Positions 7,682 through 56,271 of a stretch of 64,000 bases of DNA are shown in pieces. How positions within the stretch are numbered: position 1 is the stretch's first letter; the number at the start of each line of letters is the position of its first letter. The stretch covers positions 324,595 to 388,594 of the IMG/VR virus record IMGVR_UViG_3300024262_006558; one strand, written 5' to 3'. Both the position numbers and the translations under genes were made by a program. The notes beneath the pieces are model-generated. The model made no database searches. It was not told the origin of the DNA and was given only the letters and a program-made list of their open reading frames with translations.

Positions 7682-8791
7682 TTATCTTACTTCTACCCCT
7701 AAATTGTCAGTAATAGAATTTTCTATCCTATTATGAATCTCATTTATTTCATCATCTGTTAAAGTTCTGTTTGGAGATCTATATACCAATGAATAACAAA
7801 GAGAGGTTCTATTCGTCTTAGGGTTTGTGAATTTATCAGATAAACTGATAGATTCAATCAAATCATCTCCTTCAGCTCTAGAAATTTCCATGAATTCATT
7901 CTCATGGAATCCTTCAGGAGTCCAGAAAGATATATCTCTATTAACTGGAGGGTATTTAGAATATTCTTTGAACTCAACTACTTGACCTGATGCGAATTGC
8001 TTCAAGAATCTTTCGTCTTCAGTCCAAAAATATCTAATATCCTTTATGTTGAATAAAATCATAGCAAGCCTTTCAAGCCCTAGGCCGAAAGCCCAAGCTT
8101 GTTTACCACCTAACCCAATAGAGGACATTATATCTGGCTCTACAGTTCCACCTCCTAATACTTCTACCCATTTATCTTCTCCACCCATATTGAATAGCAC
8201 CTCTATTTCAGTTGAATCATAGGTGAATGGGAATTCTGTTTCTGGATCGAACTTTTCTTTCTCATATTCTTCTGCAGACAACTCTGCTTTAATAGAATCA
8301 TCAAATTCTTTATTATCTTTGAATCTATATTGTTGTCCAGGGAAAAGTGTCTCCACCATTTTAGACATCCAATGCCTTAATTCTTGAGCTGGATCTTTAT
8401 CAGCAAGACAGAACCCGTCAATCTGATGGAATACTGGAGCGTGCGTAGCGTCTACGGTGTCTTTACGGTAAACATCTCCAGTAACTAAATATTTAGTGTG
8501 ACCTGATTTTACCAAAGGTACTAAGTGAGCAGTCATTTGAGTACGAAGAACCGTTTCTTCATCTTCATAGTAAGTATCTGTAATAGCTCTTGCAGGATGG
8601 TCTTTAGGAACCAGTAACATGTCGAAGCAATGAGCTGCAGGAACTTTAGGTTCTAACCCTTCAATTTTCTCGAACCCTTCAAATACTTCGTAAATTTTTC
8701 TTTTAACAATCTCTAATGGATGGTTCTTTTGTTGGTAGAGATTTCTACCTAGTTTTTGCTTAATAGCATCTGTGATGTTGTTCATACTCAA
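7682..8791 (-). CDS. Phenylalanyl-tRNA synthetase, monomeric mitochondrial (FARS2)-like alpha plus FDX-ACB chimera
   Basis: DHPARAITDTYY, LRTQMTAH, GDVYRKDTVDATHAPVFHQ, FPFT, EVLGGG, AFGLGLERLAM, then YPPVNRDISFW anticodon-binding domain. Confidence 0.92.
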   Translation of the reverse strand: MSMNNITDAIKQKLGRNLYQQKNHPLEIVKRKIYEVFEGFEKIEGLEPKVPAAHCFDMLLVPKDHPARAITDTYYEDEETVLRTQMTAHLVPLVKSGHTKYLVTGDVYRKDTVDATHAPVFHQIDGFCLADKDPAQELRHWMSKMVETLFPGQQYRFKDNKEFDDSIKAELSAEEYEKEKFDPETEFPFTYDSTEIEVLFNMGGEDKWVEVLGGGTVEPDIMSSIGLGGKQAWAFGLGLERLAMILFNIKDIRYFWTEDERFLKQFASGQVVEFKEYSKYPPVNRDISFWTPEGFHENEFMEISRAEGDDLIESISLSDKFTNPKTNRTSLCYSLVYRSPNRTLTDDEINEIHNRIENSITDNLGVEVR

Positions 8792-8831
8792 TTGCTTTTA
8801 TTATGTATATCAAGAACAACAAATATATGGC

Positions 8832-9599
8832 TTATTTTTTTCTTCTGCTAGTTTTTCTAGTAGTTTTTTTAACAGTTTTCTTATTTTTATTCTTTTCTAA
8901 TTCAAGGTGAGGATACTGAGGTTTATACCTTCTAGAACTACCTCCTGAATTTCTTAGATCATATGGAGCATAATCTCTATTACGTACTATATCCTCTATA
9001 TGTTGTTTCTGAAGTTTACTAGGTTTTTCAGATAGGTTTTGTTGATATCTATCTATTGCTTCATCAAGCATCGCTTGATAAGCTCTTACGATTGGAGTTA
9101 TTGGATAATTAGTAGGATCTTTAACTGGATCCTTTTTGACAACTATCACCTTTTCTTTTTTAACAACCTTTGTAGAAATTACCTTTTTGACAGGCTTAGG
9201 CTTTAAAGCTACAGATGGCTTTTTAGGAGCGCTTGGTTTTTGAGCTACAGTTTTAGGTTTTACCGCTGTGCTAACTGGCTTCTTTGGAGCAACTGGTTTT
9301 GCTGTTACATTTTTAGATTTAGTTACTGTAGGTTTTTTGGGAGCAGCTGGTTTCTTAGTTACCGACTTAGTTACTGTAGGTTTTTTGGGAGCAGCTGGTT
9401 TTGCTGTTTTAGTTCTAACTGGCTTCTTTGGAGCAGTTGGTTTCTTAGTTACCGACTTAGTTACTTGTTTAGATTTAACAACAACAGCGGCTTTTTTAGG
9501 AGCCGCTGTTTTTTTTGGTGTAACTGGTTTTTTTACAGCAGGTTTCTTTGGAGCTGCAGGTTTCTTATTTACTGTTTTAGCTGTTATTTTCTTAGCCAT
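8832..9599 (-). CDS. Lys/Ala/Pro-rich histone H1-like basic protein
   Basis: Repeated KKPAAPKKPxVTKSVT; start probably MAKK at 9599. Confidence 0.65.
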   Translation of the reverse strand: MAKKITAKTVNKKPAAPKKPAVKKPVTPKKTAAPKKAAVVVKSKQVTKSVTKKPTAPKKPVRTKTAKPAAPKKPTVTKSVTKKPAAPKKPTVTKSKNVTAKPVAPKKPVSTAVKPKTVAQKPSAPKKPSVALKPKPVKKVISTKVVKKEKVIVVKKDPVKDPTNYPITPIVRAYQAMLDEAIDRYQQNLSEKPSKLQKQHIEDIVRNRDYAPYDLRNSGGSSRRYKPQYPHLELEKNKNKKTVKKTTRKTSRRKK

Positions 9600-9625
9600 A
9601 TAGTAATATAACACTTGCCATGACC

Positions 9626-10030
9626 TTATTTCAAGACTTTTTTAACATTTAAAGAATCTAAACAACATTTTTGAGGTTTAGTATAAACTCTGAATGTAAC
9701 ATATTCTAAACCATCTTCATCAAGTTCTATTTCAACATATTTACAAATACCTCTTATGCATACATTATGATAAATTAAGGTGCAATCATTTGGACCAGTC
9801 CAATCTTCAGTATTAGGTGCTCTTCCCATAATTTCCACTACTTCATTATAACTAAGTCCTCTCTTGTTTAAAGAAAAAGCAAGTTCTCCTTCTTCATAAG
9901 GAGTGTAATCGGAATCAATTCCTATTAATTTTTCAGCTTTATAATGAGGTAGTTTATTGTCATTACATGAAAACCCAAACAACACACCTATCATTAAACC
10001 AATTATTGCAATTACTGTTCTTTGAGCCAT
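9626..10030 (-). CDS. Putative lipoprotein
   Basis: Hydrophobic signal ending FGFSC; GLSYNEVVEIMGRAP resembles SmpA/OmlA-type fold. Confidence 0.5.
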   Translation of the reverse strand: MAQRTVIAIIGLMIGVLFGFSCNDNKLPHYKAEKLIGIDSDYTPYEEGELAFSLNKRGLSYNEVVEIMGRAPNTEDWTGPNDCTLIYHNVCIRGICKYVEIELDEDGLEYVTFRVYTKPQKCCLDSLNVKKVLK

Positions 10031-11589
10031 AATAATACATTTTTAATTCTAAATATTGTTTCATCTGATCCTATTAATTCCATAATTGGAAATAATTCAG
10101 GTCCGCCAGTTTCTTGTGTTATAATATACCTTAATGGTTTTAACACATCACCAAACTTCACACCAAGGTCATCACAAGTAATCTTTAAGTAATTCTTTGT
10201 TTGAGCAGTTGGGACCGTTGTATAGTCTTCATAAAAATCAGTAAGAACCTCTACAACATTATCAGTCAATTGCTTTTTAAGAATGCTCCAATCATAATCT
10301 TCTTTATTAAGTGGAAGGAATAAATACTGAGATTTTGGCATCAGATCAGTTATAAACTCTACTCGATCCTTAAGGAGATCGCAAGCTTTAGTAGCGTATA
10401 CTTCATTAAGCCTGGATAATGTAAAGTGAGGCTTATAAACCTCACCCCAACTTTCAACCTCATATTTCCAGTCTTTCAATAAAGTTTCAGCTAATACACT
10501 TGAATCAGTTTGGCGAATATACTTTCCATTCATCCAAGTAATCTTTTCATTGTCATAGCGAATACCTGCTTTGTTAACTCTATCCATAGAGAATGCATTT
10601 ACCAATTCTTCAAAGGTAAAAATCTCTTGATCGTTGCCAGGGTTCCACCCTAACATCGCCATAAAATTTACTACAGCATCTTTATCATAACCTCCCTCTT
10701 TATAACCTAAACATGTAATTTGTTGTTTCTTTTTATCGTCATACACTTGACATTGAAAAGGATAGATAGGAAAACCTAATCTATGAGCCGTTCTCTTACT
10801 TAATTTACCTTTACCATCAGGGTTTAAAACTAATGGCAAGTGGGCAAATTCAGGAATATCCCACCCTAAAGCTTCGTACAACATAATATGTAATGGAGTG
10901 GATGGTAACCACTCTTCCCCTCTTATCACATGAGATATCTTCATAAGATGATCATCTATGACAGCAGCTAAGTGATACGTTGGAACACCATCAGATTTCA
11001 TAAGCACTTTATCATCCACTTCATTAGAATTGAATGTGACTTTATCTCTGACCATGTCAGTAAATGTAATTTCTTTATCTTTTGTAACTTTAAATCTTAT
11101 TACGTAAGACGCGCCAGAAGAAATTGCTTTTTTAACATCGCTTTCCCCCATTGTAAGAGAATTAGACATCAAGTCTCTAGTGTTATGATCATATTTAGGC
11201 ATAGGATTAATATCCGTTTTAAGATCTTCTCTCATAGCATTCAATGCCGCAGGAGTATCAAAAGCGTAATAAGCATGTCCAGATTTGATTAACTCTTGAA
11301 CATATACCTCATATAACTCCAACCTCTCAGATTGTATATATGGACCATCAAGGCCGCCTATGCCTGGACCTTCATCAAACTCTATACCGCACCAATCCAT
11401 AGATTTCTTGATATATTCTTGAGCTCCTTCTACGAGCCTTGAACTATCTGTATCTTCTATTCTGAGTATTAATTCACCACCATATTTAGCTGCGAACAAA
11501 TAGTTGTAAAGGGCTGTTCTTATATTACCACAATGTATTGGACCTGTCGGGCTTGGAGCAAATCTAGTTCTAATGCGTTTTTCTTCCAT
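10012..11589 (-). CDS. gltX: Glutamyl-tRNA synthetase
   Basis: RFAPSPTGPIHCGN (HIGH-like), RIEDTD, VIRGEEW, KLSKR (KMSKS-like). Confidence 0.95.
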   Translation of the reverse strand: MEEKRIRTRFAPSPTGPIHCGNIRTALYNYLFAAKYGGELILRIEDTDSSRLVEGAQEYIKKSMDWCGIEFDEGPGIGGLDGPYIQSERLELYEVYVQELIKSGHAYYAFDTPAALNAMREDLKTDINPMPKYDHNTRDLMSNSLTMGESDVKKAISSGASYVIRFKVTKDKEITFTDMVRDKVTFNSNEVDDKVLMKSDGVPTYHLAAVIDDHLMKISHVIRGEEWLPSTPLHIMLYEALGWDIPEFAHLPLVLNPDGKGKLSKRTAHRLGFPIYPFQCQVYDDKKKQQITCLGYKEGGYDKDAVVNFMAMLGWNPGNDQEIFTFEELVNAFSMDRVNKAGIRYDNEKITWMNGKYIRQTDSSVLAETLLKDWKYEVESWGEVYKPHFTLSRLNEVYATKACDLLKDRVEFITDLMPKSQYLFLPLNKEDYDWSILKKQLTDNVVEVLTDFYEDYTTVPTAQTKNYLKITCDDLGVKFGDVLKPLRYIITQETGGPELFPIMELIGSDETIFRIKNVLLWLKEQ

Positions 11590-31399: not shown

Positions 31400-31434
31400 A
31401 TACTGATATAACGAAAATAATAGGCAAATGTTGC

Positions 31435-46978: not shown

Positions 46979-47197
46979 TTATCTATCACTTCCTAATAAG
47001 CCACGTTGTAAAGTTCTCCATCCACCTTCTTCATAAATCTGAAGCGTTTGAAATGTTGAATTGAATAACATGATACCAGGTGTCGGTTGTGAAATGTTTT
47101 CCCTTTCTCTTTGTGTATAAATTTGAAAATTTATAGCTTTAACCTCCCTTACTTTAAAAGGCATATAAAACCTTTTACGAATTGTCTTGTGCGCCAT
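46979..47197 (-). CDS. MRKxFY-family protein (MAHKTIRKRFY) with tail-fibre-like T.xR..I..P..G...FN motif
   Basis: TQRERENISQPTPGIMLFNSTFQTLQIYEEGGW. Confidence 0.6.
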   Translation of the reverse strand: MAHKTIRKRFYMPFKVREVKAINFQIYTQRERENISQPTPGIMLFNSTFQTLQIYEEGGWRTLQRGLLGSDR

Positions 47198-47393
47198 TGT
47201 TATCTATTATGTTTCCATAATAAATAGGATTCACTTCTGCAAGGGCGTATCTAGATCTCAAATTTACCTTTGAGCTAAATGAAGGATCACATATAACCTT
47301 CGTAGTATTAACCATTATATATGGCATAAACACAAGCCCAGGCATACTTAGATCCACACACTTATTATACGCAAAGTAAAATCTCTTTCTCAT
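47175..47393 (-). CDS. MRKxFY-leader protein with major capsid protein C-terminal fragment
   Basis: PGLVFMPYI...DPSFSSKVNLRSRYAL vs recalled gp23 AGIYYAPYV...DPKNFQPVMGFKTRYGI. Confidence 0.75.
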   Translation of the reverse strand: MRKRFYFAYNKCVDLSMPGLVFMPYIMVNTTKVICDPSFSSKVNLRSRYALAEVNPIYYGNIIDNNGAQDNS

Positions 47394-47464
47394 TACACTA
47401 AATTTGCTTGAGCCTCTAGTTCAGCCCAATAGTCTATGCCAAATGTTTCAGCATTATACCTGAT

Positions 47465-47914
47465 TTAACTCGTGGTTTGCTCAACTCTACGAACTTCATC
47501 ACCAACCCTTACATTAGTAAAGAAAGTCATTGGTTCAGCAAATACATGATAAAACTTTTTAATAGTCCTCCCGTCTGCATGTGCCTTATGATCCAAGTCT
47601 CTTCTAATTTTCCAAATATACCAAGGCTCATCTTCTGAACATGTATTTGAGGCTGAATAAACGAAGTCTAAATAATTCAAAATTCCTATAGGCCCATTCA
47701 TAGGCCGTACTTCAACAAGTTCTTGAGCTAGCAGTGTAGAAACAGGTCTTCTAGCTACAATAGATCCCTCATCTCTTGACGAGCGTCCTTCTTGCAATTT
47801 TCTCATACTATACCATTCACTAATGGAACACTCTTTTTCTATAGGAACATACCAGTCTTCATCAATGAATAAATCTGGATAAACATTATATCCTACATAG
47901 AAATTCTTTCTCAC
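47465..47914 (-). CDS. MRKxFY-leader protein with major capsid Gol-region fragment
   Basis: RRPVSTLLAQELVEVRPMNGPIGILNYLDFVY vs recalled gp23 RRAIPNLIAFDICGVQPMNSPTGQVFALRAVY. Confidence 0.8.
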   Translation of the reverse strand: MRKNFYVGYNVYPDLFIDEDWYVPIEKECSISEWYSMRKLQEGRSSRDEGSIVARRPVSTLLAQELVEVRPMNGPIGILNYLDFVYSASNTCSEDEPWYIWKIRRDLDHKAHADGRTIKKFYHVFAEPMTFFTNVRVGDEVRRVEQTTS

Positions 47915-47961
47915 TATTATGCTTTTATTAAAACATAATGATAAATAATATAAAAATCAAA

Positions 47962-48183
47962 TTAAGACTTTGGTTTACAGAAGTGTTCTTCTCTAAAATT
48001 CATGTATGTAGACATCATTACAGCATCACACATGTCAGTAAGATCATGGTTCTCTTTCAAGGCGTCTAACAGTCCTGTTTCAGACCATTTAGTTACTAAA
48101 TGTTCACGTTGAATTTGTAAAGTTCTACTACCCCACAATTCTTTTGGAGCTGGATTGTATGCATGATAAAAGTACTTCCTCAT
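47962..48183 (-). CDS. MRKxFY-leader protein with major capsid N-terminal-like fragment
   Basis: EHLVTKWSETGLLDAL vs gp23-type L..KW...GLLEGL. Confidence 0.7.
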   Translation of the reverse strand: MRKYFYHAYNPAPKELWGSRTLQIQREHLVTKWSETGLLDALKENHDLTDMCDAVMMSTYMNFREEHFCKPKS

Positions 48184-48185
48184 TA

Positions 48186-48431
48186 TTATAAATTCAAATC
48201 TTCTATATTAATACCAAAACTGCTCAAATTAATTGTAGCTTTCATACGTTCTCTTGTTTGCTCATTGTTTGGTTCTCCAACAAACTGTTCCAAGGCTACC
48301 CTCATTTGTTCTTGAGCATCAACTCCAAACACATTAAAATTGCTATCTGGAAGATTTAGTTCAATGGGAAAACGTACAGACACACTTGGAAACTTGTATT
48401 TGTTATACGCATGGTAAAATTGCTTTCTCAT
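48186..48431 (-). CDS. MRKxFY-leader protein (capsid-helix-like FGVDA.E and sheath-like FVGEPNNEQTR)
   Basis: MRKQFYHAYN; start overlaps upstream stop (ATGA). Confidence 0.6.
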   Translation of the reverse strand: MRKQFYHAYNKYKFPSVSVRFPIELNLPDSNFNVFGVDAQEQMRVALEQFVGEPNNEQTRERMKATINLSSFGINIEDLNL

Positions 48432-48673
48432 ACTCTAGTCATCTTAAAAGGCATAATTTTAGACAGTTGCCTAAAAGAATCTGGAGCCCCTCTAAGAACT
48501 TTAAATGTTGTGAAATCATTCTCACTTACAAGAGTGTCAGATATATCAACATTATATTTGTTACATATCTGCTCTATGCTAATCCCGCTGATCATAATTA
48601 AGTCCTGAACACTTTCAAGACTTATCTTCATTTTTATTTTATAAGGATGACCTATATAGAATCTCTTTCTCAT
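48428..48673 (-). CDS. MRKxFY-leader protein with capsid SxExxQDL-like fragment
   Basis: True start MRKRFY at 48673 (ATGA coupling); ISLESVQDLIMISG vs gp23 YSIELAQDLRAVHG. Confidence 0.65.
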   Translation of the reverse strand: MRKRFYIGHPYKIKMKISLESVQDLIMISGISIEQICNKYNVDISDTLVSENDFTTFKVLRGAPDSFRQLSKIMPFKMTRV

Positions 48674-48882
48674 GCTACAACTTGGACCCATCGTCCATTT
48701 AAATAAATTTTAACAGAACCTTCATCCCTATCATAAATAGACTGACCATCAAATGGGCTTGCCACCTCTTCAGGTAAATAACCAGGTAAAGTATCTTCTA
48801 TAATAACTTGATGGTGTCTTTCTAACTCTTCTAAAGTTATAACTGCTTTAAGATTTCCGTTTAAATAGAAGCGTTTTCTCAT
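48670..48882 (-). CDS. MRKxFY-leader protein with tail-fibre-like P..GQ.IYD....VKIY.NG.W motif
   Basis: MRKRFY; SPFDGQSIYDRDEGSVKIYLNGRW. Confidence 0.6.
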   Translation of the reverse strand: MRKRFYLNGNLKAVITLEELERHHQVIIEDTLPGYLPEEVASPFDGQSIYDRDEGSVKIYLNGRWVQVVA

Positions 48883-49021
48883 ATGCGTGTTCTCTCATTT
48901 CTTTTGCTAATAAATCACGTTTCTCTACACTTATTTCAATTCCATATTGAGACAACTGATCCCAAGGAACTCCCAATACTGTAAGCGCTGGCATATATGC
49001 AAAATAAAACTTCTTTCTCAT
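48848..49021 (-). CDS. MRKxFY-leader protein (57 aa, missed by track) with capsid HGxDAxxEL-like helix
   Basis: MRKKFYFAYMPALTVLGVPWDQLSQYGIEISVEKRDLLAKEMREHAYEKTLLFKRKS*. Confidence 0.68.
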   Translation of the reverse strand: MRKKFYFAYMPALTVLGVPWDQLSQYGIEISVEKRDLLAKEMREHAYEKTLLFKRKS

Positions 49022-49023
49022 TG

Positions 49024-49107
49024 TACTCGAAGAGGGAGTCGAACCCTCATGCCCATAAGGGCGCTAGATCCTAAGTCTAGTGCGTCTACCAATTCCGCCA
49101 TCCGAGC
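49024..49107 (-). tRNA. tRNA-Leu(TAG), canonical type II
   Basis: CTAGA-CT TAG GA-TCTAG, long V arm, A73. Confidence 0.92.
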
Positions 49108-49213
49108 AAGTAAATAAATTTAAACTTTTTTTATGATATTATCAAATTATGCTAATACAAAAAAGCGAAGACTCACGCCCTCGCTTTTAAACTACTATTA
49201 TTTCAAAATGTGA

Positions 49214-49618
49214 TTATTTCTTCTTCAGCATTCTATAAATAGGTTCGAAACCTATTCCAAACGCTAATCTCAATATAACAAAGTCAATAACTAGATTATC
49301 TGTAATAGGTTGAAATAACACCATTCCAGCAAAGAAACATAAAAACATTGCAGCTTGAGCAAAATGCCACCCATCCGTTAATGAGACAAACACTGTCGCG
49401 CTTAATGGAAAACGTTCTTTATATTCTGGAGTAAATTTCCATAAATAATACCATCGCTTTTTATATTCTTTAACTCTTCTTCCCCCTGAGTTGATCTTCC
49501 ACTTTTTCTTCCAACTTTTGGATTTATTCCAGTAGTTGTTTAAGAAACCGTCTTCGGAGCTAACGTCCATTATGGCGTTTGCAGCTCCAGCAAATAATGC
49601 AAATAAAATTGACAACAT
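49214..49618 (-). CDS. Membrane protein
   Basis: Hydrophobic segments; TDGWH motif. Confidence 0.6.
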   Translation of the reverse strand: MLSILFALFAGAANAIMDVSSEDGFLNNYWNKSKSWKKKWKINSGGRRVKEYKKRWYYLWKFTPEYKERFPLSATVFVSLTDGWHFAQAAMFLCFFAGMVLFQPITDNLVIDFVILRLAFGIGFEPIYRMLKKK

Positions 49619-49626
49619 GTTTTTAT

Positions 49627-49812
49627 TTATAAATATGTTGTGTTTTTTGTGCCTCCAGAATTATAATATGTACTTCCAGAATTATAATATGTACTTCCAG
49701 AATTAGGTATATAAGGATCTATACACTCTCTTTCACAACTAAACAATGTCGGGATAAAAATTGTCCCCAATGTTACAATTGATGCTTTTTTTAAAAAATC
49801 TCTCCTATTCAT
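49627..49812 (-). CDS. Small Tat-signal lipoprotein
   Basis: MNRRDFLKK...LFSC; NSGSTYY repeats. Confidence 0.65.
   Translation of the reverse strand: MNRRDFLKKASIVTLGTIFIPTLFSCERECIDPYIPNSGSTYYNSGSTYYNSGGTKNTTYL
49654..49704. repeat. 21-nt tandem repeat inside Tat lipoprotein gene
   Basis: ccagaattataatatgtactt x2 plus partial copy. Confidence 0.8.
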
Positions 49813-49837
49813 AGTATATAAATATACTTATTTTTTG

Positions 49838-49917
49838 TACCCCTGGAGAGACTCGAACTCTCAAAAGCTCTGGGTTTGAACCAGTTATCTGTACCGATTT
49901 GAATAAGCCACAGGGGC
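49838..49917 (-). tRNA. Atypical tRNA with CAA (Leu) anticodon, short V arm, enlarged D region
   Basis: GCCCCTG/CAGGGGT acceptor, CTGG-TT CAA AC-CCAG, GAGAG-TTCGAGT-CTCTC. Confidence 0.75.
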
Positions 49918-49922
49918 GGGAT

Positions 49923-50165
49923 TTAAATTCTTCTTATTAGTTTTTTAAACTTAACACTTATTACTTTGATAGGGTTTATTTTATATGCATGAAAATACAA
50001 CCCAAAAAAGCAAGCTGATAACAGGTAAAAAAAGAAGGTTGTACTCCAGTAAGAATCTGTTAACTTCATCAGCATTGCGAATGCTATATCGTATCCTAGA
50101 GGGTTGAAGAATGTCCCCATTACTAATGCTAGTGTTCCGATCGTTTTTCTGTTCACCTTCATCAT
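49923..50165 (-). CDS. Small membrane protein
   Basis: FFNPLGYD...two TMs. Confidence 0.6.
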   Translation of the reverse strand: MMKVNRKTIGTLALVMGTFFNPLGYDIAFAMLMKLTDSYWSTTFFFYLLSACFFGLYFHAYKINPIKVISVKFKKLIRRI

Positions 50166-50202
50166 CCATTGTTTTCATATTTCGTTTAACATTTATTTAG
50201 TG

Positions 50203-50282
50203 TACCCCTGGAGAGACTCGAACTCTCAAAAGATCTGGGTCTAAGCCAGTTAGCTGTACCGATTTGCATAATCCACAGGGGC
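50203..50282 (-). tRNA. Atypical tRNA with TAG (Leu) anticodon, short V arm
   Basis: Paralog of 49838..49917; loop CT TAG AC. Confidence 0.75.
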
Positions 50283-50350
50283 ATATAATTATAAATAGTC
50301 GTGACTTGTATCCACGGATGTAACCTCTCAACTTTGCGTTCTATTCATTG

Positions 50351-50433
50351 TACCTCAGACAGGATTTGAACCTGCACGCCCATTACGGGCACTGGATTTT
50401 AAGTCCAGCGTGTCTGCGTTCCACCACCGAGGC
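50351..50433 (-). tRNA. tRNA-Leu(TAA), type II
   Basis: CTGGA-CT TAA AA-TCCAG, long V arm, A73. Confidence 0.9.
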
Positions 50434-50446
50434 GTGATGTTTGTTG

Positions 50447-50526
50447 TACCCCTGGCGAGACTCGAACTCGCAATAGCTCTGGGTTTAAGCCAGTTATCTG
50501 TACCGATTTGAATAAGCCACAGGGGC
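50447..50526 (-). tRNA. Atypical tRNA with TAA (Leu) anticodon, short V arm
   Basis: Paralog; loop CT TAA AC; T stem GCGAG/CTCGC covaries. Confidence 0.75.
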
Positions 50527-50531
50527 ATGCT

Positions 50532-50744
50532 TTATTTTTTTACTACCTTTTCAAAAAAGCTAACGGGCATGTCTCCGTTAATTTTCATAAACTCTTCTTC
50601 CGTTAAGCAATCACCATTAGCTTGCCAAGCCGCTTGGCAGAAATCTCTATATTCCCTACCATACTTTCTAGTGATATCCTTAAAGCTGATCTTAAAGTTG
50701 GATTCATCCGACTCAAAGTCAATAATTTCAAATATTCTTTTCAT
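50532..50744 (-). CDS. Hypothetical protein (start MKRIFE; longer ORF call overlaps tRNA)
   Basis: ATG 3 nt after tRNA-Leu(AAG) discriminator. Confidence 0.55.
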   Translation of the reverse strand: MKRIFEIIDFESDESNFKISFKDITRKYGREYRDFCQAAWQANGDCLTEEEFMKINGDMPVSFFEKVVKK

Positions 50745-50746
50745 AG

Positions 50747-50834
50747 TACCTCTACCCAGACTCGAACTGGGAACGTTTCTCATGTTTGCCACGGGTTCTT
50801 AGCCCGCCAGCTTTGCCAATTTGCTCATAGAGGT
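50747..50834 (-). tRNA. tRNA-Leu(AAG), A34
   Basis: GCGGG-CT AAG AA-CCCGT, long V arm, A73. Confidence 0.85.
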
Positions 50835-50843
50835 ATGAATAAA

Positions 50844-50962
50844 TGTTTCAAACAGGACTCGAACCTATATTGTTACGTACCAATCAAGTCAGAGTCAGAG
50901 CCTCCTTCAATATGAGGAAACTAACTTCCAACCTGTGCGCCTACCAATTTCGCCATTGAAAC
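50844..50962 (-). ncRNA. Type II tRNA-like RNA with ~34-nt insertion in anticodon loop
   Basis: GTTTCAA/TTGAAAC acceptor, Leu-like D arm, CAGGT/ACTTG stem enclosing 41 nt, V arm, T arm. Confidence 0.7.
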
Positions 50963-50967
50963 ATTTG

Positions 50968-51040
50968 AGCCTATGACAGGAATCGAACCTGCGACATCTT
51001 CCACACCAAGGAAGTGCTCTACCGACTGAGCTACATAGGC
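50968..51040 (-). tRNA. tRNA-Thr(GGT), G37
   Basis: CTTCC-TT GGT GT-GGAAG. Confidence 0.9.
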
Positions 51041-51045
51041 ATTAG

Positions 51046-51181
51046 TGGAACAGCGGGGAATCGAACCCCTTGCAAGATTTACATTTGACACCTTAAGATA
51101 TCAACAATACTCACTAGGATTTATCACCACTTAACCAAGAGCGATCTTAAGCTCACTAGAGGCTGCAGATAAAACTGCTCC
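51046..51181 (-). ncRNA. 136-nt tRNA-like RNA resembling a tmRNA tRNA-like domain (acceptor plus T arm, no D stem)
   Basis: GGAGCAG/CTGTTCC-A, GGGG-TTCGATT-CCCC, TGCAG/TTGCA closing stem. Confidence 0.65.
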
Positions 51182-51187
51182 GTTTAG

Positions 51188-51259
51188 AGCTACATGCAGG
51201 AATCGAACCCGCCTCTGAAGCTTACAAGGCTCCTGCATCACCGACAATGCTTATGTAGC
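51188..51259 (-). tRNA. tRNA-Thr(TGT)
   Basis: GGAGC-CT TGT AA-GCTTC. Confidence 0.9.
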
Positions 51260-51272
51260 AAGAATAATTTTG

Positions 51273-51403
51273 GGGAGGGGGCTGGACTCGAACCAGCGAC
51301 CTTCTGCTTAACAGGCAATTAGAAGGAAGACAAAACATAGCCTTATTTTTAAGGGGATCATTAAATCTTTTAAGATGCTCTAACCAACTGAGCTACCCCT
51401 CCC
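51273..51403 (-). tRNA. tRNA-Asn(GTT) interrupted by 56-nt insertion in 5' strand of anticodon stem
   Basis: TC[56 nt]TGC-CT GTT AA-GCAGA; intact D, T and acceptor arms; G-1 and C73. Confidence 0.78.
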
Positions 51404-51417
51404 ATTTATTATACTTG

Positions 51418-51505
51418 AGGTACTAGTAAGATTCGAACTTACGATGGAGGATCTCTCCTCGACAGATTTGCAGCCTGCCCCTTTCGCCCACTCAGGCATA
51501 GTACC
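51418..51505 (-). tRNA. tRNA-Cys(GCA) with long variable arm
   Basis: GCAGG-CT GCA AA-TCTGT; V arm GAGGA-GAGA-TCCTC; U73. Confidence 0.85.
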
Positions 51506-51516
51506 ATATATTTTTG

Positions 51517-51590
51517 TGGAGGCACTCGGTAACGATCCGAGATCTCTGGGACTTCAATCCAGCGCATAGACCAATCTTTGCTATGCCTCC
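51517..51590 (-). tRNA. tRNA-Phe(GAA) copy 1, G37
   Basis: CTGGA-TT GAA GT-CCCAG; T loop ATCGTTA. Confidence 0.85.
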
Positions 51591-51604
51591 CTATTATTTT
51601 ATTG

Positions 51605-51789
51605 TGGAGGAAGACGGAATCGAACCGCCGACCAACCCCTCCTACGGGGCCACTCTACCAAGACACCTTTTCAAAACCACCATACAACTTAAACACTTTC
51701 CAAAACCATTATTCATGACTAATGGCTAATTACTTATGTCGTTCTCTAGCTGAATCTACTCCGTTGAAATGTCACTGAGTTACTCCTCC
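51605..51789 (-). ncRNA. tRNA-like RNA with ~113-nt insertion in D loop and irregular anticodon loop (GTAGGA)
   Basis: GGAGGAG/TTCCTCC acceptor, ACTC/GAGT D stem, insert closed by GACATTT/AGGTGTC, intact T arm. Confidence 0.7.
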
Positions 51790-51846
51790 ATGGGTCCCGT
51801 TATTTTCTAGACAGCAAGCACGGGACCACACCGCTGTAAGACGTTG

Positions 51847-51921
51847 TGCTGTGTACTGGATTCGAACCAGTGATCTTCTCGGCTTCAACGAAACGCTTTA
51901 GACCAACTAAGCTAACACAGC
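51847..51921 (-). tRNA. tRNA-Phe(GAA) copy 2, G37
   Basis: TTTCG-TT GAA GC-CGAGA. Confidence 0.9.
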
Positions 51922-51928
51922 ATTTTTG

Positions 51929-52002
51929 GGTGATGGACGGGCTACGACCCCGCGACCTTTGGCGCCACAAGCCAATGCTCTACCAACTGAGCTACCACCA
52001 CC
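51929..52002 (-). tRNA. tRNA-His(GTG) copy 1, encoded G-1
   Basis: TTGGC-TT GTG GC-GCCAA; G-1:C73. Confidence 0.88.
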
Positions 52003-52071
52003 ATATTCATAAACTGAGGAATTCCTAAGTTTACGATTTGTAATACCAATACGTCAAAGAACTATTCTTTG

Positions 52072-52144
52072 GGTGTCGATGGGGTTCGAACCCTACCATC
52101 CAGATTCACAGTCTGGGACTCTCTCCAAGTGAGCTACCGACACC
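52072..52144 (-). tRNA. tRNA-His(GTG) copy 2, encoded G-1
   Basis: CCAGA-CT GTG AA-TCTGG; G-1:C73; irregular T stem. Confidence 0.85.
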
Positions 52145-52188: not shown

Positions 52189-52220
52189 AAAAAACCCCAA
52201 CTCTTTCGAGATGGGGTTTT
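52189..52220 (-). terminator. Attenuator terminator upstream of tRNA operon
   Basis: AAAACCCCATCTC-GAAA-GAGTTGGGGTTTTTT. Confidence 0.85.
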
Positions 52221-52448: not shown

Positions 52449-53340
52449 TTTTAAATTTCCTTTCAAAATAATGGTATAAACACTTTATGTTCAAGTATAT
52501 AATATGAACATCATGTTGTGATTTCCTTTCAAAATAATGGTATACATACTGCGTCTAATATATTTAGGCATGCCTCAAATGTTGTGATTTCCTTTCAAAA
52601 TAATGGTATACATACTTTTCTACTCTTTATACTGAAGAAGCAAAGGGTTGTGATTTCCTTTCAAAATAATGGTATACATACTTTAAGCTTTTACAGGCCT
52701 CATCTTACGACTGTTGTGATTTCCTTTCAAAATAATGGTATACATACTATGGGTACATAGTTCCTCTCTCATACTTCGGTTGTGATTTCCTTTCAAAATA
52801 ATGGTATACATACTGCGTCTAATATATTTAGGCATGCCTCAAATGTTGTGATTTCCTTTCAAAATAATGGTATACATACTTTCGACATGAATACATCGCC
52901 TTTCAAAGTGGTTGTGATTTCCTTTCAAAATAATGGTATACATGCTGATTGAGCTTATGGGTGTTATGGATTCTTCGTTGTGATTTCCTTTCAAAATAAT
53001 GGTATAAATACTCTATCTTTGGAACAATAAACGATAAGGGGTTGTGATTTCCTTTCAAAATAATGGTATACATACTATTTGGCATCGAATTCCTGTTTGA
53101 GTGATAGTTGTGATTTCCTTTCAAAATAATGGTATACATACTATTTAAATACTTGCACATTAATATATACCCGTTGTGATTTCCTTTCAAAATAATGGTA
53201 TACATACTAAAGCCTGTTGACTATATGAGGCAACTAGTGTTGTGATTTCCTTTCAAAATAATGGTATACATACTTAAAAACAAAAAATGGCTTTTGCGAT
53301 ACTCGTTGTGATTTCCTTTCAAAATAATGGTATACATACT
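52449..53340 (-). CRISPR. CRISPR array: 13 repeats of 36 nt (52515..53340) plus a degenerate distal repeat; 30-nt spacers
   Basis: Plus-strand repeat GTTGTGATTTCCTTTCAAAATAATGGTATACATACT, period 66 (one 28-nt spacer); degenerate copy at 52449..52484 implies leader at right and minus-strand transcription. Confidence 0.97.
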
Positions 53341-53454
53341 AGGCCCTATCATAATCGATTAATAGATAGGTGATTATAAAGTATATTGAGTTAAAAAACT
53401 GGAGACTTATTATATAGTAACATATATTTACGATCAGTTTTCTCATTATAATTT
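53341..53454 (-). promoter_or_regulatory. CRISPR leader
   Basis: AT-rich 114 nt between cas6 stop and first repeat; cctatc...gatagg hairpin. Confidence 0.6.
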
Positions 53455-54183
53455 CTATTTAGCCAGGTATTGTCTATTATTTTCAATGTTGAATATTGAT
53501 CCAAACCCTATACCAGTAGAGCTTCCAATTCCAATAGCATATAAGGTATCCATAACTTTTTTATTTGCAAAAATTTCTAAATTACATTGATTTGCTATGT
53601 TAAATACTCTTTTTCCATTTATTGATTGTTTAATATCAATATGTCGAGTTCTATTTCTTTTTGATTTCCTTACTTTTACTTTAAATTTATCTAATTTCAA
53701 ATCGGAATTAACTTTACTCAACTTGTTTATAATATGCTTATGGAGCTCCTCTTCAAAATCATCATCATTTAAAGTATGTATAATGTCAGATTTATTCTTT
53801 GTGGTCTTTAAAAAAATTGGAGATAACATACCTACATGATTCCATCCATTTTTGAAATTATCTATTCTAAAATCATATCCATCATATTTCATACCATAAC
53901 ACAATTCAATCGTATTTGCATTGATAATAAGAAAATTAATTATGGCAGATATGAATTCTGCATCCAGAGATGAAACAGTAATATAGCATCCGCTACTCAT
54001 ATCTAAGAAATTCTCACCTTTAATCTTTTTTCCGCCCTGGATTGTAGATAAAGAATAGTTTGAGGATCTATCATGATAATGATTATTTTTTCCTAAACAT
54101 TTATGTAAGAAAGATATTACATGATATTGATTATTAAAAGGAACTCCCTCTTTGGTGCCTTTAAATTTAATTTTTATACGCAT
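53455..54183 (-). CDS. cas6: CRISPR-associated endoribonuclease Cas6
   Basis: C-terminal GIGSSTGIGFG loop; YSLSTIQGG; LSPI. Confidence 0.9.
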   Translation of the reverse strand: MRIKIKFKGTKEGVPFNNQYHVISFLHKCLGKNNHYHDRSSNYSLSTIQGGKKIKGENFLDMSSGCYITVSSLDAEFISAIINFLIINANTIELCYGMKYDGYDFRIDNFKNGWNHVGMLSPIFLKTTKNKSDIIHTLNDDDFEEELHKHIINKLSKVNSDLKLDKFKVKVRKSKRNRTRHIDIKQSINGKRVFNIANQCNLEIFANKKVMDTLYAIGIGSSTGIGFGSIFNIENNRQYLAK

Positions 54184-55157
54184 AAAATTTCTGTTTTTAA
54201 ATCACTATTAATGTCTCCAACTCTTTTAAAATCATCAAAATTTAGATCTCTATCTTTATAGATACCCTTTATTTTTACGAAACCACCGTCTAAAATCGTA
54301 GCACACCCTTTACTGTTTCTAACTCTTTCAATATCTTCTTCAGAAAAAGGAATGTATAATATACCATTATATATCTCAGTATAGCCAATGCTCTTAGGAA
54401 CATTTAACCTAGTATCTTTTTTCTTGTTTGAATTAGTTATTAACTCTTTTGCTTTTGTATCGCTTACTTTTGCAATATAATTATAGAACTGTGTTAAGCC
54501 TCTTTCTTTTGCTAATGTAAAGAAATTTTTATATTCATTTTCTATATCTCCAGTAACTCCATTTACAAATATTTTTTGTAATTTTAATAAGAGTTCTATA
54601 CATGTATACTGTTTCTTAATATTCTCTATTGTATCCACATTTAAAACCACCTTAGATAACTCCATCAAGGAATAAAAAACATCATATGTACCTAGTATAT
54701 CTTTACAATATCTCCTTATAGTTTCATAATTTATATTATTATATTTAGAAGTTGAATTCCAATGAGCCTTTCTAAGTGAAGTAACCTCAGTCCTCACATG
54801 TCTATTGCCACTCTTATCAATATTTACATTAGAAATATCTAATTTTAGATACGAATCTTCTGCAACGCTCATCAAATCTTCACGATTTTTATAATGAACC
54901 TCCCTTAGAGAAGGCTTTGGTCTATCACCGACCAAAACCTGTAGAAGATTATTTATTTGCTTTTTAGTAATAGGTTCTTCAAAATATTTAGTGATAACTT
55001 TTTTGGGTATATTATTTTCCTTGTCAGCTGCTTGAACAACTGTTCTTGATCTAAATTTACCATTTTCAATAACTAAATCTTTTTCATTTTTGTTACCATA
55101 TTTATTAACTCTAAATAATTTAGCGTTCTTGAACTCTACTACCAAATAGTTTTTCAT
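54174..55157 (-). CDS. cas5fv: Cas5fv-like Cascade subunit
   Basis: INNLLQVLVGDRPK, TEVTSLRK and C-terminal GCATILDGG align with recalled Cas5fv blocks; position between cas7fv and cas6. Confidence 0.65.
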   Translation of the reverse strand: MKNYLVVEFKNAKLFRVNKYGNKNEKDLVIENGKFRSRTVVQAADKENNIPKKVITKYFEEPITKKQINNLLQVLVGDRPKPSLREVHYKNREDLMSVAEDSYLKLDISNVNIDKSGNRHVRTEVTSLRKAHWNSTSKYNNINYETIRRYCKDILGTYDVFYSLMELSKVVLNVDTIENIKKQYTCIELLLKLQKIFVNGVTGDIENEYKNFFTLAKERGLTQFYNYIAKVSDTKAKELITNSNKKKDTRLNVPKSIGYTEIYNGILYIPFSEEDIERVRNSKGCATILDGGFVKIKGIYKDRDLNFDDFKRVGDINSDLKTEILCV

Positions 55158-56230
55158 TTCTTTTTTGATTTAGTTTTTTTAGATTCTGATTTATCCTCTT
55201 TTTCAGCATAAACTTTCATCGCTTCACGTAATTCTTTTGATATTTTTTCATCTGCCTCAGAGTAAAATATTTCAAAATCGCACTCAAAATCTTCAATATC
55301 TTTTCTTTTTTCTAAAGAAACCCAACCGTTTTCTTTATCAAAAACATCATCAATTGGATCATATACCAATTTATATTCCAATTTAGATGTTTTTGCAAAT
55401 GCATGAGTTCTTTTTACTTGGGCCTCCATCATCATTTCCAATATTCTTCTTACTAAGAAGTTAATATCATCGTTTGATAATAAACATCCATACTCAGGAG
55501 TTTTATCTGAACCTGAGTTAAGCGTAAAGTAATTTATGTCAGAATTAAATGATGGTAATTTACTTTTTAAAAAATATTTGAATTTTTCAAAGTCATCGGG
55601 ATTAATCATCTGTCTATCATACAATAAATCAAATGATAAGAATTGCATAGATTGTATATCAATATCACCCTCACTCATATAAGTGATCTCTCCAACTTCT
55701 TCTTTTTTGTGCAAGGTTATACCAGATTTGTCTTTATCACCTGTTTCTTTTTCTGATCTTCTTGAGTGAAAACCTAAGACACTTTTGGCGTCATTAGTTT
55801 GTTCAGCATATGATAAATTAAGGCAACTCTTCTTTTTCTCACCCGCTCCACCGCTAATAGTTGTCATAAATCCTCTAACTAACATTTCAGGCGTAGCATA
55901 GTACATTAATTTCAAATCTTTGTTTGAATTTATACTTGAATTATAACCTTCATCAGGAAAAATGGCGCTCTTTAAGCATTGGGAGGAAATAGCAATTTTA
56001 TAATTAGCCGCCTTTACTTCTTCACCTTTGTCATTTATAACAATGTTTTCATAGATATTTTTTTTGGCATATGAAACGTTATCATTTAAATCAATTAAAT
56101 GATTTAAACCATCAACTGGTTTACCTTTATTCCAAAAAGCTAACGTTTGTTTTTTATCATCGTAATTAACAATTCCTCGACCTTCTAATTTCCATCTAAG
56201 TAGAATGTTTTTAACTTTTCTTTTCATCAT
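55154..56230 (-). CDS. cas7fv: Cas7fv-like Cascade backbone subunit
   Basis: LEGRGIVNYD, ISSQCLKSAIF, LVRGF, TYMSEGDIDIQSMQFLSFDLLYDR, EYGCLLSNDD align with recalled Shewanella Cas7fv. Confidence 0.8.
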   Translation of the reverse strand: MMKRKVKNILLRWKLEGRGIVNYDDKKQTLAFWNKGKPVDGLNHLIDLNDNVSYAKKNIYENIVINDKGEEVKAANYKIAISSQCLKSAIFPDEGYNSSINSNKDLKLMYYATPEMLVRGFMTTISGGAGEKKKSCLNLSYAEQTNDAKSVLGFHSRRSEKETGDKDKSGITLHKKEEVGEITYMSEGDIDIQSMQFLSFDLLYDRQMINPDDFEKFKYFLKSKLPSFNSDINYFTLNSGSDKTPEYGCLLSNDDINFLVRRILEMMMEAQVKRTHAFAKTSKLEYKLVYDPIDDVFDKENGWVSLEKRKDIEDFECDFEIFYSEADEKISKELREAMKVYAEKEDKSESKKTKSKKK

Positions 56231-56271
56231 TTTTTATATTTAAGAGTAGTAAGTTTATATTTTTTTCCCAA

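What the first reader, a model, noticed from the sequence alone, without database searches (positions are those of the whole stretch)
51605..51789. tRNA-like RNA with a 113-nt structured insertion in the D loop
Seen: intact acceptor, D stem and T arm; insert closed by GACATTT/AGGTGTC between AG and TTGGTA; anticodon loop only 6 nt (GTAGGA). An extra hairpin GGTCCCGT/ACGGGACC (51793..51827) abuts the 5' end. Inference: a tRNA scaffold carrying an RNA cargo or a nuclease decoy rather than a decoding tRNA.
Basis: partly seen in the sequence, partly recalled or inferred. Interest (0 to 1): 0.6.

Follow-up and report, generated by a model that had tools for sequence, protein, structure and literature searches.

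The report
Phage tRNA gene interrupted in D-loop
A giant bacteriophage carries a tRNA-shaped gene with a 112-base AT-rich insert in its D-loop and an anticodon loop one base short; the gene is real, is one of five interrupted tRNA genes in this phage, may have one relative in an unrelated phage, and nobody knows whether or how the insert is removed.

Summary
On the minus strand, 51605..51789 is a complete tRNA cloverleaf. It has a 112/113-nt insert between G15 and G18 of the D-loop, closed by a 7-bp stem, and a 6-nt anticodon loop. An 8-bp hairpin lies 3 nt upstream. Three independent assemblies carry it unchanged.

'Structured' is not supported. The insert folds no better than shuffled sequence (z -0.40), has the base composition of the genome, and is unique in the 388-kb record.

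It fits no known intron type. There is no bulge-helix-bulge motif, no group I or small-ribozyme match, and no Lak-phage-type T-arm minihelix. The phage record encodes no EndA, RtcB or RNase III.

The host is a huge phage (a 388.6-kb record cut from a 494-kb contig). It has four other interrupted tRNA genes and a dense RNA-repair gene set: Rnl1, Pnkp, Tpt1, Thg1, RlaP.

A pattern scan of IMG/VR found one more tRNA with a ~113-nt insert at the same D-loop site (L165, a 41-kb phage). The two inserts share an exact 11-mer (p~0.002) and similar 5' ends, so they may form a family.

Best reading: an intervening sequence of an undescribed kind in a tRNA that probably does not decode normally. A decaying pseudogene and a retained tRNA-like RNA remain live rivals. 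No RNA data exist.

The parts
51783..51789 (-). acceptor stem, 5' strand (GGAGGAG)
   Evidence: Pairs 7/7 with 51606..51612.
51774..51782 (-). U8, A9, D-stem 5' strand ACTC, and the D-loop start AG(T)
   Evidence: A14 and G15 are present.
51662..51773 (-). 112-nt AT-rich insert in the D-loop, between G15/U16 and U17/G18
   Evidence: Deleting it yields an ARAGORN tRNA. GC is 0.36. Fold z is -0.40. It is unique in the genome.
51767..51773 (-). closing stem of the insert, 5' strand GACATTT; start of the 5' block shared with L165
51662..51668 (-). closing stem of the insert, 3' strand AGGTGTC
   Evidence: p 0.0017 at the exact ends.
51704..51727 (-). 8-bp AU-rich hairpin inside the insert (AGCCATTA / TAATGGTT)
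   Evidence: It is the only internal helix of the insert kept in the centroid fold as well as the MFE.
51700..51710 (-). 11-mer AATGGTTTTGG, shared exactly with the D-loop insert of L165
   Evidence: p 0.0018 by shuffles.
51663..51708 (-). internal direct repeat TGGTTTTG(G/A)AAA(G)GTGT, two copies (about 51693..51708 and 51663..51679)
   Evidence: 16 of 17 bases identical. The 5' block can pair with either copy (-5.6 and -6.3 kcal/mol).
51652..51661 (-). D-loop end TTGGTA (G18, G19, A21) and D-stem 3' strand GAGT
51635..51650 (-). anticodon arm: 5-bp stem GCCCC/GGGGT with the 6-nt loop GTAGGA (51640..51645)
51605..51634 (-). variable loop TGGTC, T arm, acceptor 3' strand, discriminator A
   Evidence: the Rfam tRNA partial match of 18.2 bits, 51605..51659, covers this stretch and the anticodon arm.
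51793..51827 (-). 8-bp GC-rich hairpin 3 nt upstream of the tRNA 5' end; no U tract follows it
   Evidence: It is not reported as a terminator.
49024..52143 (-). the tRNA array that contains the candidate

Best explanation
The locus is a real tRNA gene of a huge bacteriophage, interrupted in the D-loop by a 112/113-nt intervening sequence of a kind not yet described.

Shown:
- It lies in a co-oriented array of about 17 tRNA-type genes and has the same 3' trailer (CAA...) as its neighbours.
- Every stem and every tertiary-contact nucleotide is intact: U8-A14, G15-C48, G18, G19, the T54-A58 loop and G26.
- The insert sits in the D-loop's variable pocket between positions 15 and 18. A 7-bp stem brings its two ends together.

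Inferred:
- The insert behaves as an intron-like or insertion element rather than a folded cargo.
- If it is removed, the likeliest route is endonucleolytic cutting at the base of the closing stem. The ends would then be healed and sealed by the phage's own Pnkp-like kinase-phosphatase, Rnl1-type RNA ligase and Tpt1. These genes lie in the same 64-kb window.
- Even without the insert the RNA has a 6-nt anticodon loop. It therefore probably does not read codons normally and may be on its way out of the decoding pool.
For: - The cloverleaf appears once the insert is deleted, in all deletion variants.
- Three independent assemblies carry the identical sequence.
- The terminal 7-bp helix is unlikely by chance (p 0.0017).
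- The insert resembles background DNA: GC 0.36 against 0.59 in the exons, and fold z -0.40.
- The exons are at most 52/79 identical to any other tRNA of the array, so this is not a fresh duplicate. Even so, no stem pair is broken.
- Five of the roughly 17 tRNA-type genes in this phage are interrupted.
- Two of those inserts (B and E) share a conserved 3' motif although their exons have diverged.
- A second phage tRNA, L165:2470-2654, has a ~113-nt insert at the same D-loop site. It shares an exact 11-mer with the candidate (p 0.0018) and a similar 5' block. A motif written from these two blocks after the comparison occurs nowhere else in the fetched loci or in 44 other viral records.
- Rnl1, Pnkp-like, Tpt1 and Thg1 genes are confirmed in the window.
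- There is a precedent: the 'enigmatic introns' in Lak megaphage tRNAs (PMC6784885).
Against: - There is no RNA evidence; the one run that holds the sequence is DNA.
- No cutting enzyme or known splice signal was found. There is no BHB motif, no EndA, RtcB or RNase III in the record, and no ribozyme or group I match.
- Repair genes like these are common in large phages without interrupted tRNAs, so they only permit the mechanism.
- The 6-nt anticodon loop is unexplained by a splicing model.
- The nearest relatives' tRNA arrays hold no orthologue.
- The family rests on two sequences. Their predicted folds differ, and their 5'-block similarity alone is weak (p about 0.03).
Confidence: 0.4

Rival explanations
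1. It is a tRNA pseudogene. A paralogue in a fast-turnover tRNA array was disabled by two lesions: a 112-nt insertion in the D-loop and a 1-nt deletion in the anticodon loop. It may still be transcribed and end-processed, but it has no function.
For: - Two rare defects sit in one gene. Six-nt loops occur in 4 of 814 viral tRNAs, and D-loop or D-arm inserts in about 3 of 814.
- The insert has background composition, no excess structure, and is unique.
- Related arrays have no orthologue.
- The part of the array holding the candidate (His, Phe and Thr, each in two copies) has no counterpart in the related array L221.
- D-loop inserts destabilise tRNA in E. coli (PMC5397188).
Against: - No stem pair is broken and all invariant nucleotides are kept, although the gene is not a recent copy of any neighbour.
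- The insert's ends pair over 7 bp (p 0.0017).
- An insert of the same size, at the same site, sharing an 11-mer, exists in an unrelated phage.
- Four other interrupted tRNAs occur in the same genome, and two of their inserts share a conserved motif.
Confidence: 0.25
2. It is a non-decoding tRNA-like RNA that keeps the insert as an extra arm. The tRNA body would supply folding, end-processing and stability. The D-loop element, or the altered anticodon loop, would serve another purpose, such as binding or diverting a host tRNA-targeting nuclease.
For: - All tertiary-contact nucleotides are kept, and the insert leaves from the solvent-exposed variable pocket (pocket geometry from general tRNA structural knowledge).
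- The anticodon loops of both family members are abnormal: 6 nt here and C37 in L165.
- The distance from G15 to G18 is nearly the same in both, 115 and 114 nt.
- In L165 the gene is the only tRNA of a 41-kb phage. It lies just after what reads by eye as a sigma-70-type promoter, upstream of the first downstream ORF. In relatives this stretch holds other sequence that looks structured by eye.
- Other viral tRNAs carry hairpins inside the D-loop (L214, L108).
- The window is rich in tRNA-repair genes, which implies conflict over tRNA cleavage.
Against: - The insert here folds no better than shuffles.
- The predicted folds of the two members are not the same.
- A D-loop Spinach fusion was undetectable in E. 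coli, whereas a variable-loop fusion was stable.
- No binding partner or target was identified.
Confidence: 0.2
3. It is an archaeal-type bulge-helix-bulge intron at a non-canonical D-loop position, spliced by a host EndA and RtcB. That would make the virus an archaeal virus.
For: D-loop introns are known in some archaea (general knowledge; PMC6379350 was listed). The insert is AT-rich like such introns.
Against: - No BHB-like motif, in either mirror arrangement, gives a tRNA.
- The record encodes no EndA or RtcB.
- The genome has bacterial-type features. These are a hairpin-plus-U intrinsic terminator at about 52190..52215, an NAD-dependent DNA ligase, and tightly coupled genes on one strand.
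Confidence: 0.03

Closest known systems
'Enigmatic' introns in tRNA genes of Lak megaphages (Devoto et al. 2019, PMC6784885)
   Same: Both are AT-rich inserts of about 80-115 nt in tRNA genes of very large phages of bacteria. Neither matches Rfam, and the removal mechanism is unknown in both. The same isoacceptors (Phe GAA, Gly UCC, Thr UGU) are affected in Lak phages and in this phage or L165.
   Different: tRNAscan places the Lak introns at the anticodon loop (37/38). The four printed ones (Tyr, Phe, Gly, Thr) each hold a T-arm-like stretch: GGTTCGA(A/T)TCC in two, GAGTTCGAATCTC in Gly and AGTTCGTTTC in Thr (my reading of Table S6). The insert here is in the D-loop, has no T-arm-like motif, and shows no sequence similarity to them.
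Archaeal non-canonical tRNA introns (bulge-helix-bulge, cut by EndA, joined by RtcB)
   Same: These are the only well-known natural case of introns in the D-loop. They too are short and AT-rich and are removed by proteins.
   Different: There is no BHB motif here and no EndA or RtcB. The genome looks like that of a bacterial virus.
Group I introns in bacterial and phage tRNA genes
   Same: They are intervening sequences in bacterial-type tRNA genes.
   Different: They are over 200 nt, have a P1-P9 catalytic core, and sit in the anticodon loop. No Rfam group I match appears even at E 10, and 112 nt is too short.
Engineered tRNA scaffolds and aptamer fusions (for example Spinach-tRNA, PMC5397188)
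   Same: Both are a tRNA body bearing a roughly 100-nt foreign element. That fusion is 183 nt and this locus is 185 nt.
   Different: The working fusions use the variable loop or the anticodon arm. The D-loop fusion was not detectable in cells. The natural insert is not a compact fold.
tRNA-like non-coding RNAs (tmRNA, bacterial Y RNA YrlA)
   Same: They are tRNA mimics with large extra domains, and some are phage-encoded.
   Different: In those RNAs the anticodon arm is replaced and the ends differ. Here only chance-level partial matches were found, at 13.4 and 11.9 bits, and ARAGORN finds no tmRNA.

Membership tests
Canonical tRNA (Rfam RF00005 / ARAGORN) | Scores above the family threshold as encoded | tested here: not met
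   ARAGORN and Rfam do not call it at gathering score. Only the 3' part matches, at 18.2 bits against a cut-off of 29.
Canonical tRNA (Rfam RF00005 / ARAGORN) | Four-arm cloverleaf with the invariant nucleotides | tested here: met
   This holds after deletion of 51662..51773. There are 7+4+5+5 bp with none mismatched, and U8, A14, G18, G19, A21, T54-A58 and C61 are present.
Canonical tRNA (Rfam RF00005 / ARAGORN) | 7-nt anticodon loop with U33 and a purine at 37 | tested here: not met
   The loop is GTAGGA, 6 nt, in every deletion variant.
Archaeal/eukaryal BHB tRNA intron | Two 3-nt bulges separated by a 4-bp helix at the splice sites | tested here: not met
   A scan of all cut-site pairs, in both mirror arrangements, found none that yields a tRNA.
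Archaeal/eukaryal BHB tRNA intron | Splicing endonuclease EndA and ligase RtcB available | tested here: inconclusive
   Both are absent from the 388-kb phage record. The host and the other ~105 kb of the 494-kb contig were not searched.
Group I intron | Catalytic core (P3-P9) and a length over about 200 nt | tested here: not met
   The insert is 112 nt, and there is no Rfam match at E up to 10.
Small self-cleaving ribozymes (hammerhead, twister, pistol, hatchet, HDV-like) | Match to a family covariance model | tested here: not met
   None is listed at E up to 10 on a 291-nt query.
Lak-megaphage-type tRNA intron | Insert in a tRNA gene of a huge phage; AT-rich; no Rfam match | tested here: met
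Lak-megaphage-type tRNA intron | Position in the anticodon loop and an embedded T-arm-like minihelix | tested here: not met
   The insert is in the D-loop. The insert sequence holds no GTTCGA/GTTCAA-type T-loop motif, and ARAGORN in bacterial mode finds no tRNA in it even at low thresholds. Lak sequences were read.
tRNA pseudogene | Disabling lesions | tested here: met
   D-loop insert plus a 6-nt anticodon loop.
tRNA pseudogene | Decay of stems and invariant positions | tested here: not met
   All 21 stem pairs (three of them G-U) and all invariant nucleotides are intact, and the gene is not a recent duplicate.
Proposed family: ~113-nt D-loop element (candidate + L165) | Same insertion site and size, with shared sequence blocks | tested here: met
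   G15 to G18 spans 115 nt in the candidate and 114 nt in L165. They share the 11-mer (p 0.0018) and a similar 5' block (p about 0.03 alone). A motif written from the two blocks after the comparison is found nowhere else in the fetched loci or in 44 viral records.
Proposed family: ~113-nt D-loop element (candidate + L165) | Conserved secondary structure with covariation | tested here: inconclusive
   There are only two members. The 5' stem, A-rich internal loop and GGAG/UUUU helix can be drawn in both, with one compensatory and one half-compensatory pair (by hand). The overall folds differ, and MAFFT mis-aligned the pair.

The most novel reading that the evidence does not exclude
The candidate and L165 would define a new class of ~113-nt elements lodged between G15 and G18 of bacteriophage tRNA genes. 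One version is a protein-dependent tRNA intron operating in bacteria. It would be cut out, and the exons rejoined by phage-encoded healing-and-sealing enzymes (Pnkp, Rnl1-type ligase, Tpt1). That would give bacterial Tpt1/KptA a natural substrate. The other version is a new tRNA-shaped non-coding RNA whose D-loop domain is the working part.
Probability: 0.25. Interest if true: 0.8.

Novelty: new variant of a known kind. Interest (0 to 1): 0.5.

Why it matters
Interrupted tRNA genes in phages of bacteria have been an unexplained curiosity since the Lak megaphages were described. No mechanism is known for removing short non-group-I inserts in bacteria.

This genome offers a compact test case:
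- five interrupted tRNA genes of at least three kinds, one of them in the D-loop;
- a full set of RNA end-healing and ligation genes beside them, including Tpt1, whose bacterial role is an open question.

If the inserts are spliced, that would be a new RNA-processing pathway in the bacterial world. If they are retained, phages make tRNA-shaped RNAs for purposes other than decoding. If they are decay products, the case warns that tRNA counts in huge phages overstate decoding capacity. It also shows that standard tRNA callers miss such genes.

Tried and rejected
Tests on the insert itself:
- It has no significant similarity to the phage's CRISPR repeat, so Cas6-mediated excision is not supported.
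- It is not a degenerate copy of a tRNA or of its own exons; all z-scores were below 1.
- It is not a repeated mobile element. There is no second copy in the 388-kb record, in the first 80 metagenome loci fetched (L018-L097), or in GenBank phages.
- It contains no nested tRNA in ARAGORN's bacterial mode, even at low thresholds.
- It encodes no credible peptide. The 24-codon frame lacks a ribosome-binding site. The shared N-G-F-G reading with L165 follows trivially from the 11-mer.
- tmRNA, permuted-tmRNA and YrlA matches are at chance level.
- No promoter or terminator lies in or around the insert.

Searches for orthologues:
- Exact-pattern scans of IMG/VR and GTDB genomes found nothing or chance hits.
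- Neighbour-protein searches found the same phage, 100% identical, in two other assemblies.
- They also found relatives at 66-79% protein identity whose tRNA arrays lack the gene.
- Eighty metagenome loci of the 134-aa neighbour family held no interrupted tRNAs apart from two already-known loci recovered again: the window's own contig (L018) and the contig of L016 (L019).
- Relatives of the L165 phage carry other sequence in place of its tRNA.

Reads and scans:
- No RNA run holds the locus.
- The 'joints' in the DNA run come from other organisms' tRNAs.
- The B/E intron motif scan in IMG/VR gave only chance hits.

Full report
**Setting.**
- The window is the last 64 kb of a 388,594-bp IMG/VR virus record. 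That record is itself part of a 494,080-bp JGI contig.
- GC is about 0.32, and nearly all genes lie on the minus strand with coupled starts and stops.
- The record has a phage terminase.
- It has a type I CRISPR-Cas module: a Cas3 HD-helicase, a Cas7fv-like protein, Cas6 and a 66-bp-period array.
- It also encodes an NAD-dependent DNA ligase and aminoacyl-tRNA synthetases.
- A hairpin-plus-U terminator closes the CRISPR array.
- Taken together this is a huge phage of a bacterium. The tRNA array occupies 49024..52143 on the minus strand.

**Observation check.**
- The RNA-sense strand runs from 51789 down to 51605.
- It has a 7-bp acceptor stem, U8 and A9, a 4-bp D stem, a 5-bp anticodon stem, a 5-nt variable loop, a 5-bp T stem with loop TTCGATT, and discriminator A.
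- The D-loop reads AG(T) [insert] TTGGTA. Precise removal of 112 or 113 nt restores a textbook D-loop.
- ARAGORN and Rfam miss the locus as encoded. Rfam scores only the 3' part, at 18.2 bits.
- With the insert deleted, ARAGORN calls a 73-nt tRNA whose anticodon loop has 6 nt.
- I then ran a genome-wide scan. It anchors on a T arm plus a fully paired acceptor stem, and tries every single deletion. It recovers exactly five interrupted tRNA genes in this record. For this one it always gives the 6-nt loop.
- The upstream hairpin (51793..51827) is real, but no U tract follows it and it is not called a terminator.
- The sequence is identical in three assemblies.

**The insert.**
- Its ends pair over 7 bp. 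That happens in 0.17% of shuffles and 0.13% of genomic 112-mers.
- Beyond that stem and one 8-bp AU hairpin it is not notably structured: MFE -18.8 kcal/mol against -17.7 +/- 2.7 for shuffles.
- Its GC is 0.36, near the genome's 0.33 and far from the exons' 0.59.
- It has no second copy in the genome and no match in GenBank phages.
- It does not resemble any tRNA of the array, the CRISPR repeat, or the other four inserts.
- It contains a near-perfect internal direct repeat of 17 nt.

**Known intron types.**
- No bulge-helix-bulge arrangement, in either mirror form, yields a tRNA.
- The phage record has no EndA, RtcB or RNase III.
- No group I intron, small ribozyme or other Rfam family matches, even at E 10 on a short query.
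- Lak megaphage tRNA introns are the one published precedent for phages of bacteria.
  - tRNAscan places them at the anticodon loop.
  - In the sequences printed in that paper's Table S6, each carries a T-arm-like stretch.
  - The present insert has neither property.

**Genomic company.**
- Four more tRNA genes of this phage are interrupted.
  - B is 51273..51402, Gly GCC.
  - C is 50844..50962, Ser GGA.
  - D and E lie at record positions 295386..295672, Phe GAA and Gly UCC.
- B, D and E carry their inserts at the 5' side of the anticodon loop.
- B and E share a conserved 3' motif although their exons have diverged. By eye, this motif and a 5' segment can pair with the flanking exons.
- After excision, E and C would be ordinary tRNAs.
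- The window also encodes a set of tRNA and RNA-repair proteins. These are an Rnl1-type RNA ligase, a T4-Pnkp-like kinase-phosphatase, Tpt1/KptA, a Thg1-like enzyme, RlaP, NADAR and PARG. There is also a single-chain PheRS and a GluRS/GlnRS-type enzyme.
- These enzymes could seal exons left by an endonuclease. However, their textbook role is to repair tRNAs cut by host nucleases, so they permit a splicing model without showing it.

**Relatives.**
- Exact-word scans found no copy elsewhere.
- Searches with neighbouring proteins found the same phage unchanged in other samples.
- They also found related phages whose arrays contain no orthologue. Examples are L016 and L017, and L221 with 12 tRNAs at 8748..10316.
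- The exons are at most 52/79 identical to any other tRNA of the array. The gene is therefore neither a fresh duplicate nor conserved among the relatives seen.

**A wider look.**
- I scanned IMG/VR for a common D arm split by 95-125 nt and followed by a T arm (the scan was cut at 117 loci). I then ran the deletion pipeline on the hits.
- Most hits were ordinary tRNAs preceded by a chance CTCAG or by a neighbouring tRNA.
- One was a true parallel: L165:2470-2654.
  - It lies in a complete 41.4-kb phage with terminal repeats.
  - It is a 185-nt tRNA-Thr(UGU)-like gene with about 113 nt between G15 and G18.
  - It has no BHB motif, and position 37 is an unusual C.
  - Its insert is GC-rich and well folded, z -2.9.
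- The two inserts share several features.
  - An exact 11-mer: only 0.18% of shuffle pairs share a word that long.
  - A similar 5' block, GA.A..TCAA.GGAG, right at the insert start. Alone this is weak: 2.7% of shuffles score as well.
  - A nearly equal length, 115 against 114 nt.
  - A motif I wrote from the two blocks after seeing them occurs nowhere else in the 2.1 Mb of fetched sequence or in 44 other viral records. Because it was derived from the data, this is not an independent test.
  - By hand, the same stem, A-rich internal loop and GGAG/UUUU helix can be drawn in both. That drawing has one compensatory and one half-compensatory pair. The overall folds differ, though, and two sequences cannot prove a structure.
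- Relatives of the L165 phage carry other sequence at that position.
- Other viral tRNAs found in passing have shorter D-loop hairpins (L214, L108) or inserts at the 5' side of the anticodon loop (L146/L183, L132).
- Non-7-nt anticodon loops occur in 7 of 814 tRNAs in these loci.

**Interpretation.**
- Three readings remain open. I rank them as follows.
  - 0.40: an intervening sequence of an undescribed kind.
  - 0.25: a decaying pseudogene.
  - 0.20: a retained tRNA-like RNA.
- Against a simple pseudogene:
  - the stems and invariant positions are intact in a gene that is not a recent copy;
  - the terminal helix is improbable by chance;
  - four other interrupted genes are present, two of them with a conserved insert motif;
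  - L165 has a comparable insert at the same site.
- Against a folded cargo:
  - the insert has no excess structure and has background composition;
  - a D-loop aptamer fusion could not be detected in E. coli.
- Against a splicing model:
  - no cutter or splice signal was found;
  - there is no RNA evidence;
  - the product would still have a 6-nt anticodon loop.
- What is shown: the anatomy, its non-random features, the genomic context, and one possible relative.
- What is inferred: removal of the insert and any role for the repair enzymes.

**Limits.**
- No RNA run holds the locus.
- The host is unknown.
- About 105 kb of the parent contig was not examined.

Noticed in passing
window 52450-58494 (-): The phage encodes a type I CRISPR-Cas module: a Cas3 HD-helicase, a Cas7fv-like protein, an unassigned 327-aa protein and Cas6. 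About 14 copies of a 36-nt repeat (period 66) follow, ending in a degenerate repeat and a hairpin-plus-U terminator just upstream of the tRNA array.
   Followed up: partly
window 51273-51402 (-) and 50844-50962 (-); record G000 295386-295531 and 295538-295672 (-): These are four further interrupted tRNA genes: Gly GCC, Ser GGA, Phe GAA with a long variable arm, and Gly UCC. The two Gly inserts (51 and 61 nt) are homologous. They share GGCTATGTT..GTCTTCCTTCTA, and by eye they can pair with both flanking exons. No BHB motif was found for B or D.
   Followed up: partly
window 50447-50526, 50211-50290, 49846-49925 (-): Three paralogous tRNA-like genes of about 80 nt were missed by ARAGORN. They have a large D-loop and short variable region, and their anticodon loops read UAA, UAG and CAA (all Leu codon families). 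One carries a compensatory change in the T stem. The related phage L221 has 75-76-nt tRNAs with Leu anticodons as well.
   Followed up: partly
window 51418-51505 (-); L221:9805-9896: A long-variable-arm (type II) tRNA carries the Cys anticodon GCA, and the same kind appears in a related phage. If it is charged according to its body type, it would misread Cys codons.
   Followed up: no
window 5980-7071, 7682-8791, 10012-11589, 17467-18840, 25664-26614, 30497-32220, 41243-41773, 44940-45416 (-): A dense set of tRNA and RNA-repair genes: Rnl1-type RNA ligase, single-chain PheRS, GluRS/GlnRS-type enzyme, RlaP, Pnkp-like kinase-phosphatase, PARG, Thg1-like enzyme, Tpt1/KptA and NADAR.
   Followed up: yes
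window 46979-49021 (-): Seven tandem small ORFs (57-149 aa) all begin with MRK(R/K/N/Q/Y)FY. They form a paralogous family of unknown function between the RNaseH-like gene and the tRNA array.
   Followed up: no
whole record: IMG/VR labels the 388.6-kb record a 'provirus'. It is cut from a 494,080-bp contig (Ga0210003_1000004). The same phage, 100% identical over 20 kb, occurs in an ENA assembly and in a second IMG/VR fragment.
   Followed up: partly
L165:2141-2710; L225:3429-3935; L226:558-1050: In the 41-kb L165 phage, the D-loop-interrupted tRNA lies just after what reads by eye as a sigma-70-type promoter, upstream of the first downstream ORF. Related phages keep the promoter region but carry other sequence there. 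It looks structured by eye, with long terminal stems of about 200 nt, and was not identified.
   Followed up: partly
L214:6612-6714 (+); L108:2034-2159 (-) and 2329-2401 (-); L146:5611-5730; L132:9305-9512: Other viral contigs hold tRNAs with hairpins inside the D-loop (about 30 and 55 nt). Others have inserts at the 5' side of the anticodon loop (45 nt) or in the anticodon region (about 135 nt). One has a 6-nt anticodon loop. Standard callers miss most of them.
   Followed up: partly
window 11670-12623, 18834-19928, 23593-24624 (+): Free-standing homing-endonuclease-type genes (NUMOD/HNH-like and two LAGLIDADG-like) lie on the opposite strand to almost all other genes.
   Followed up: no
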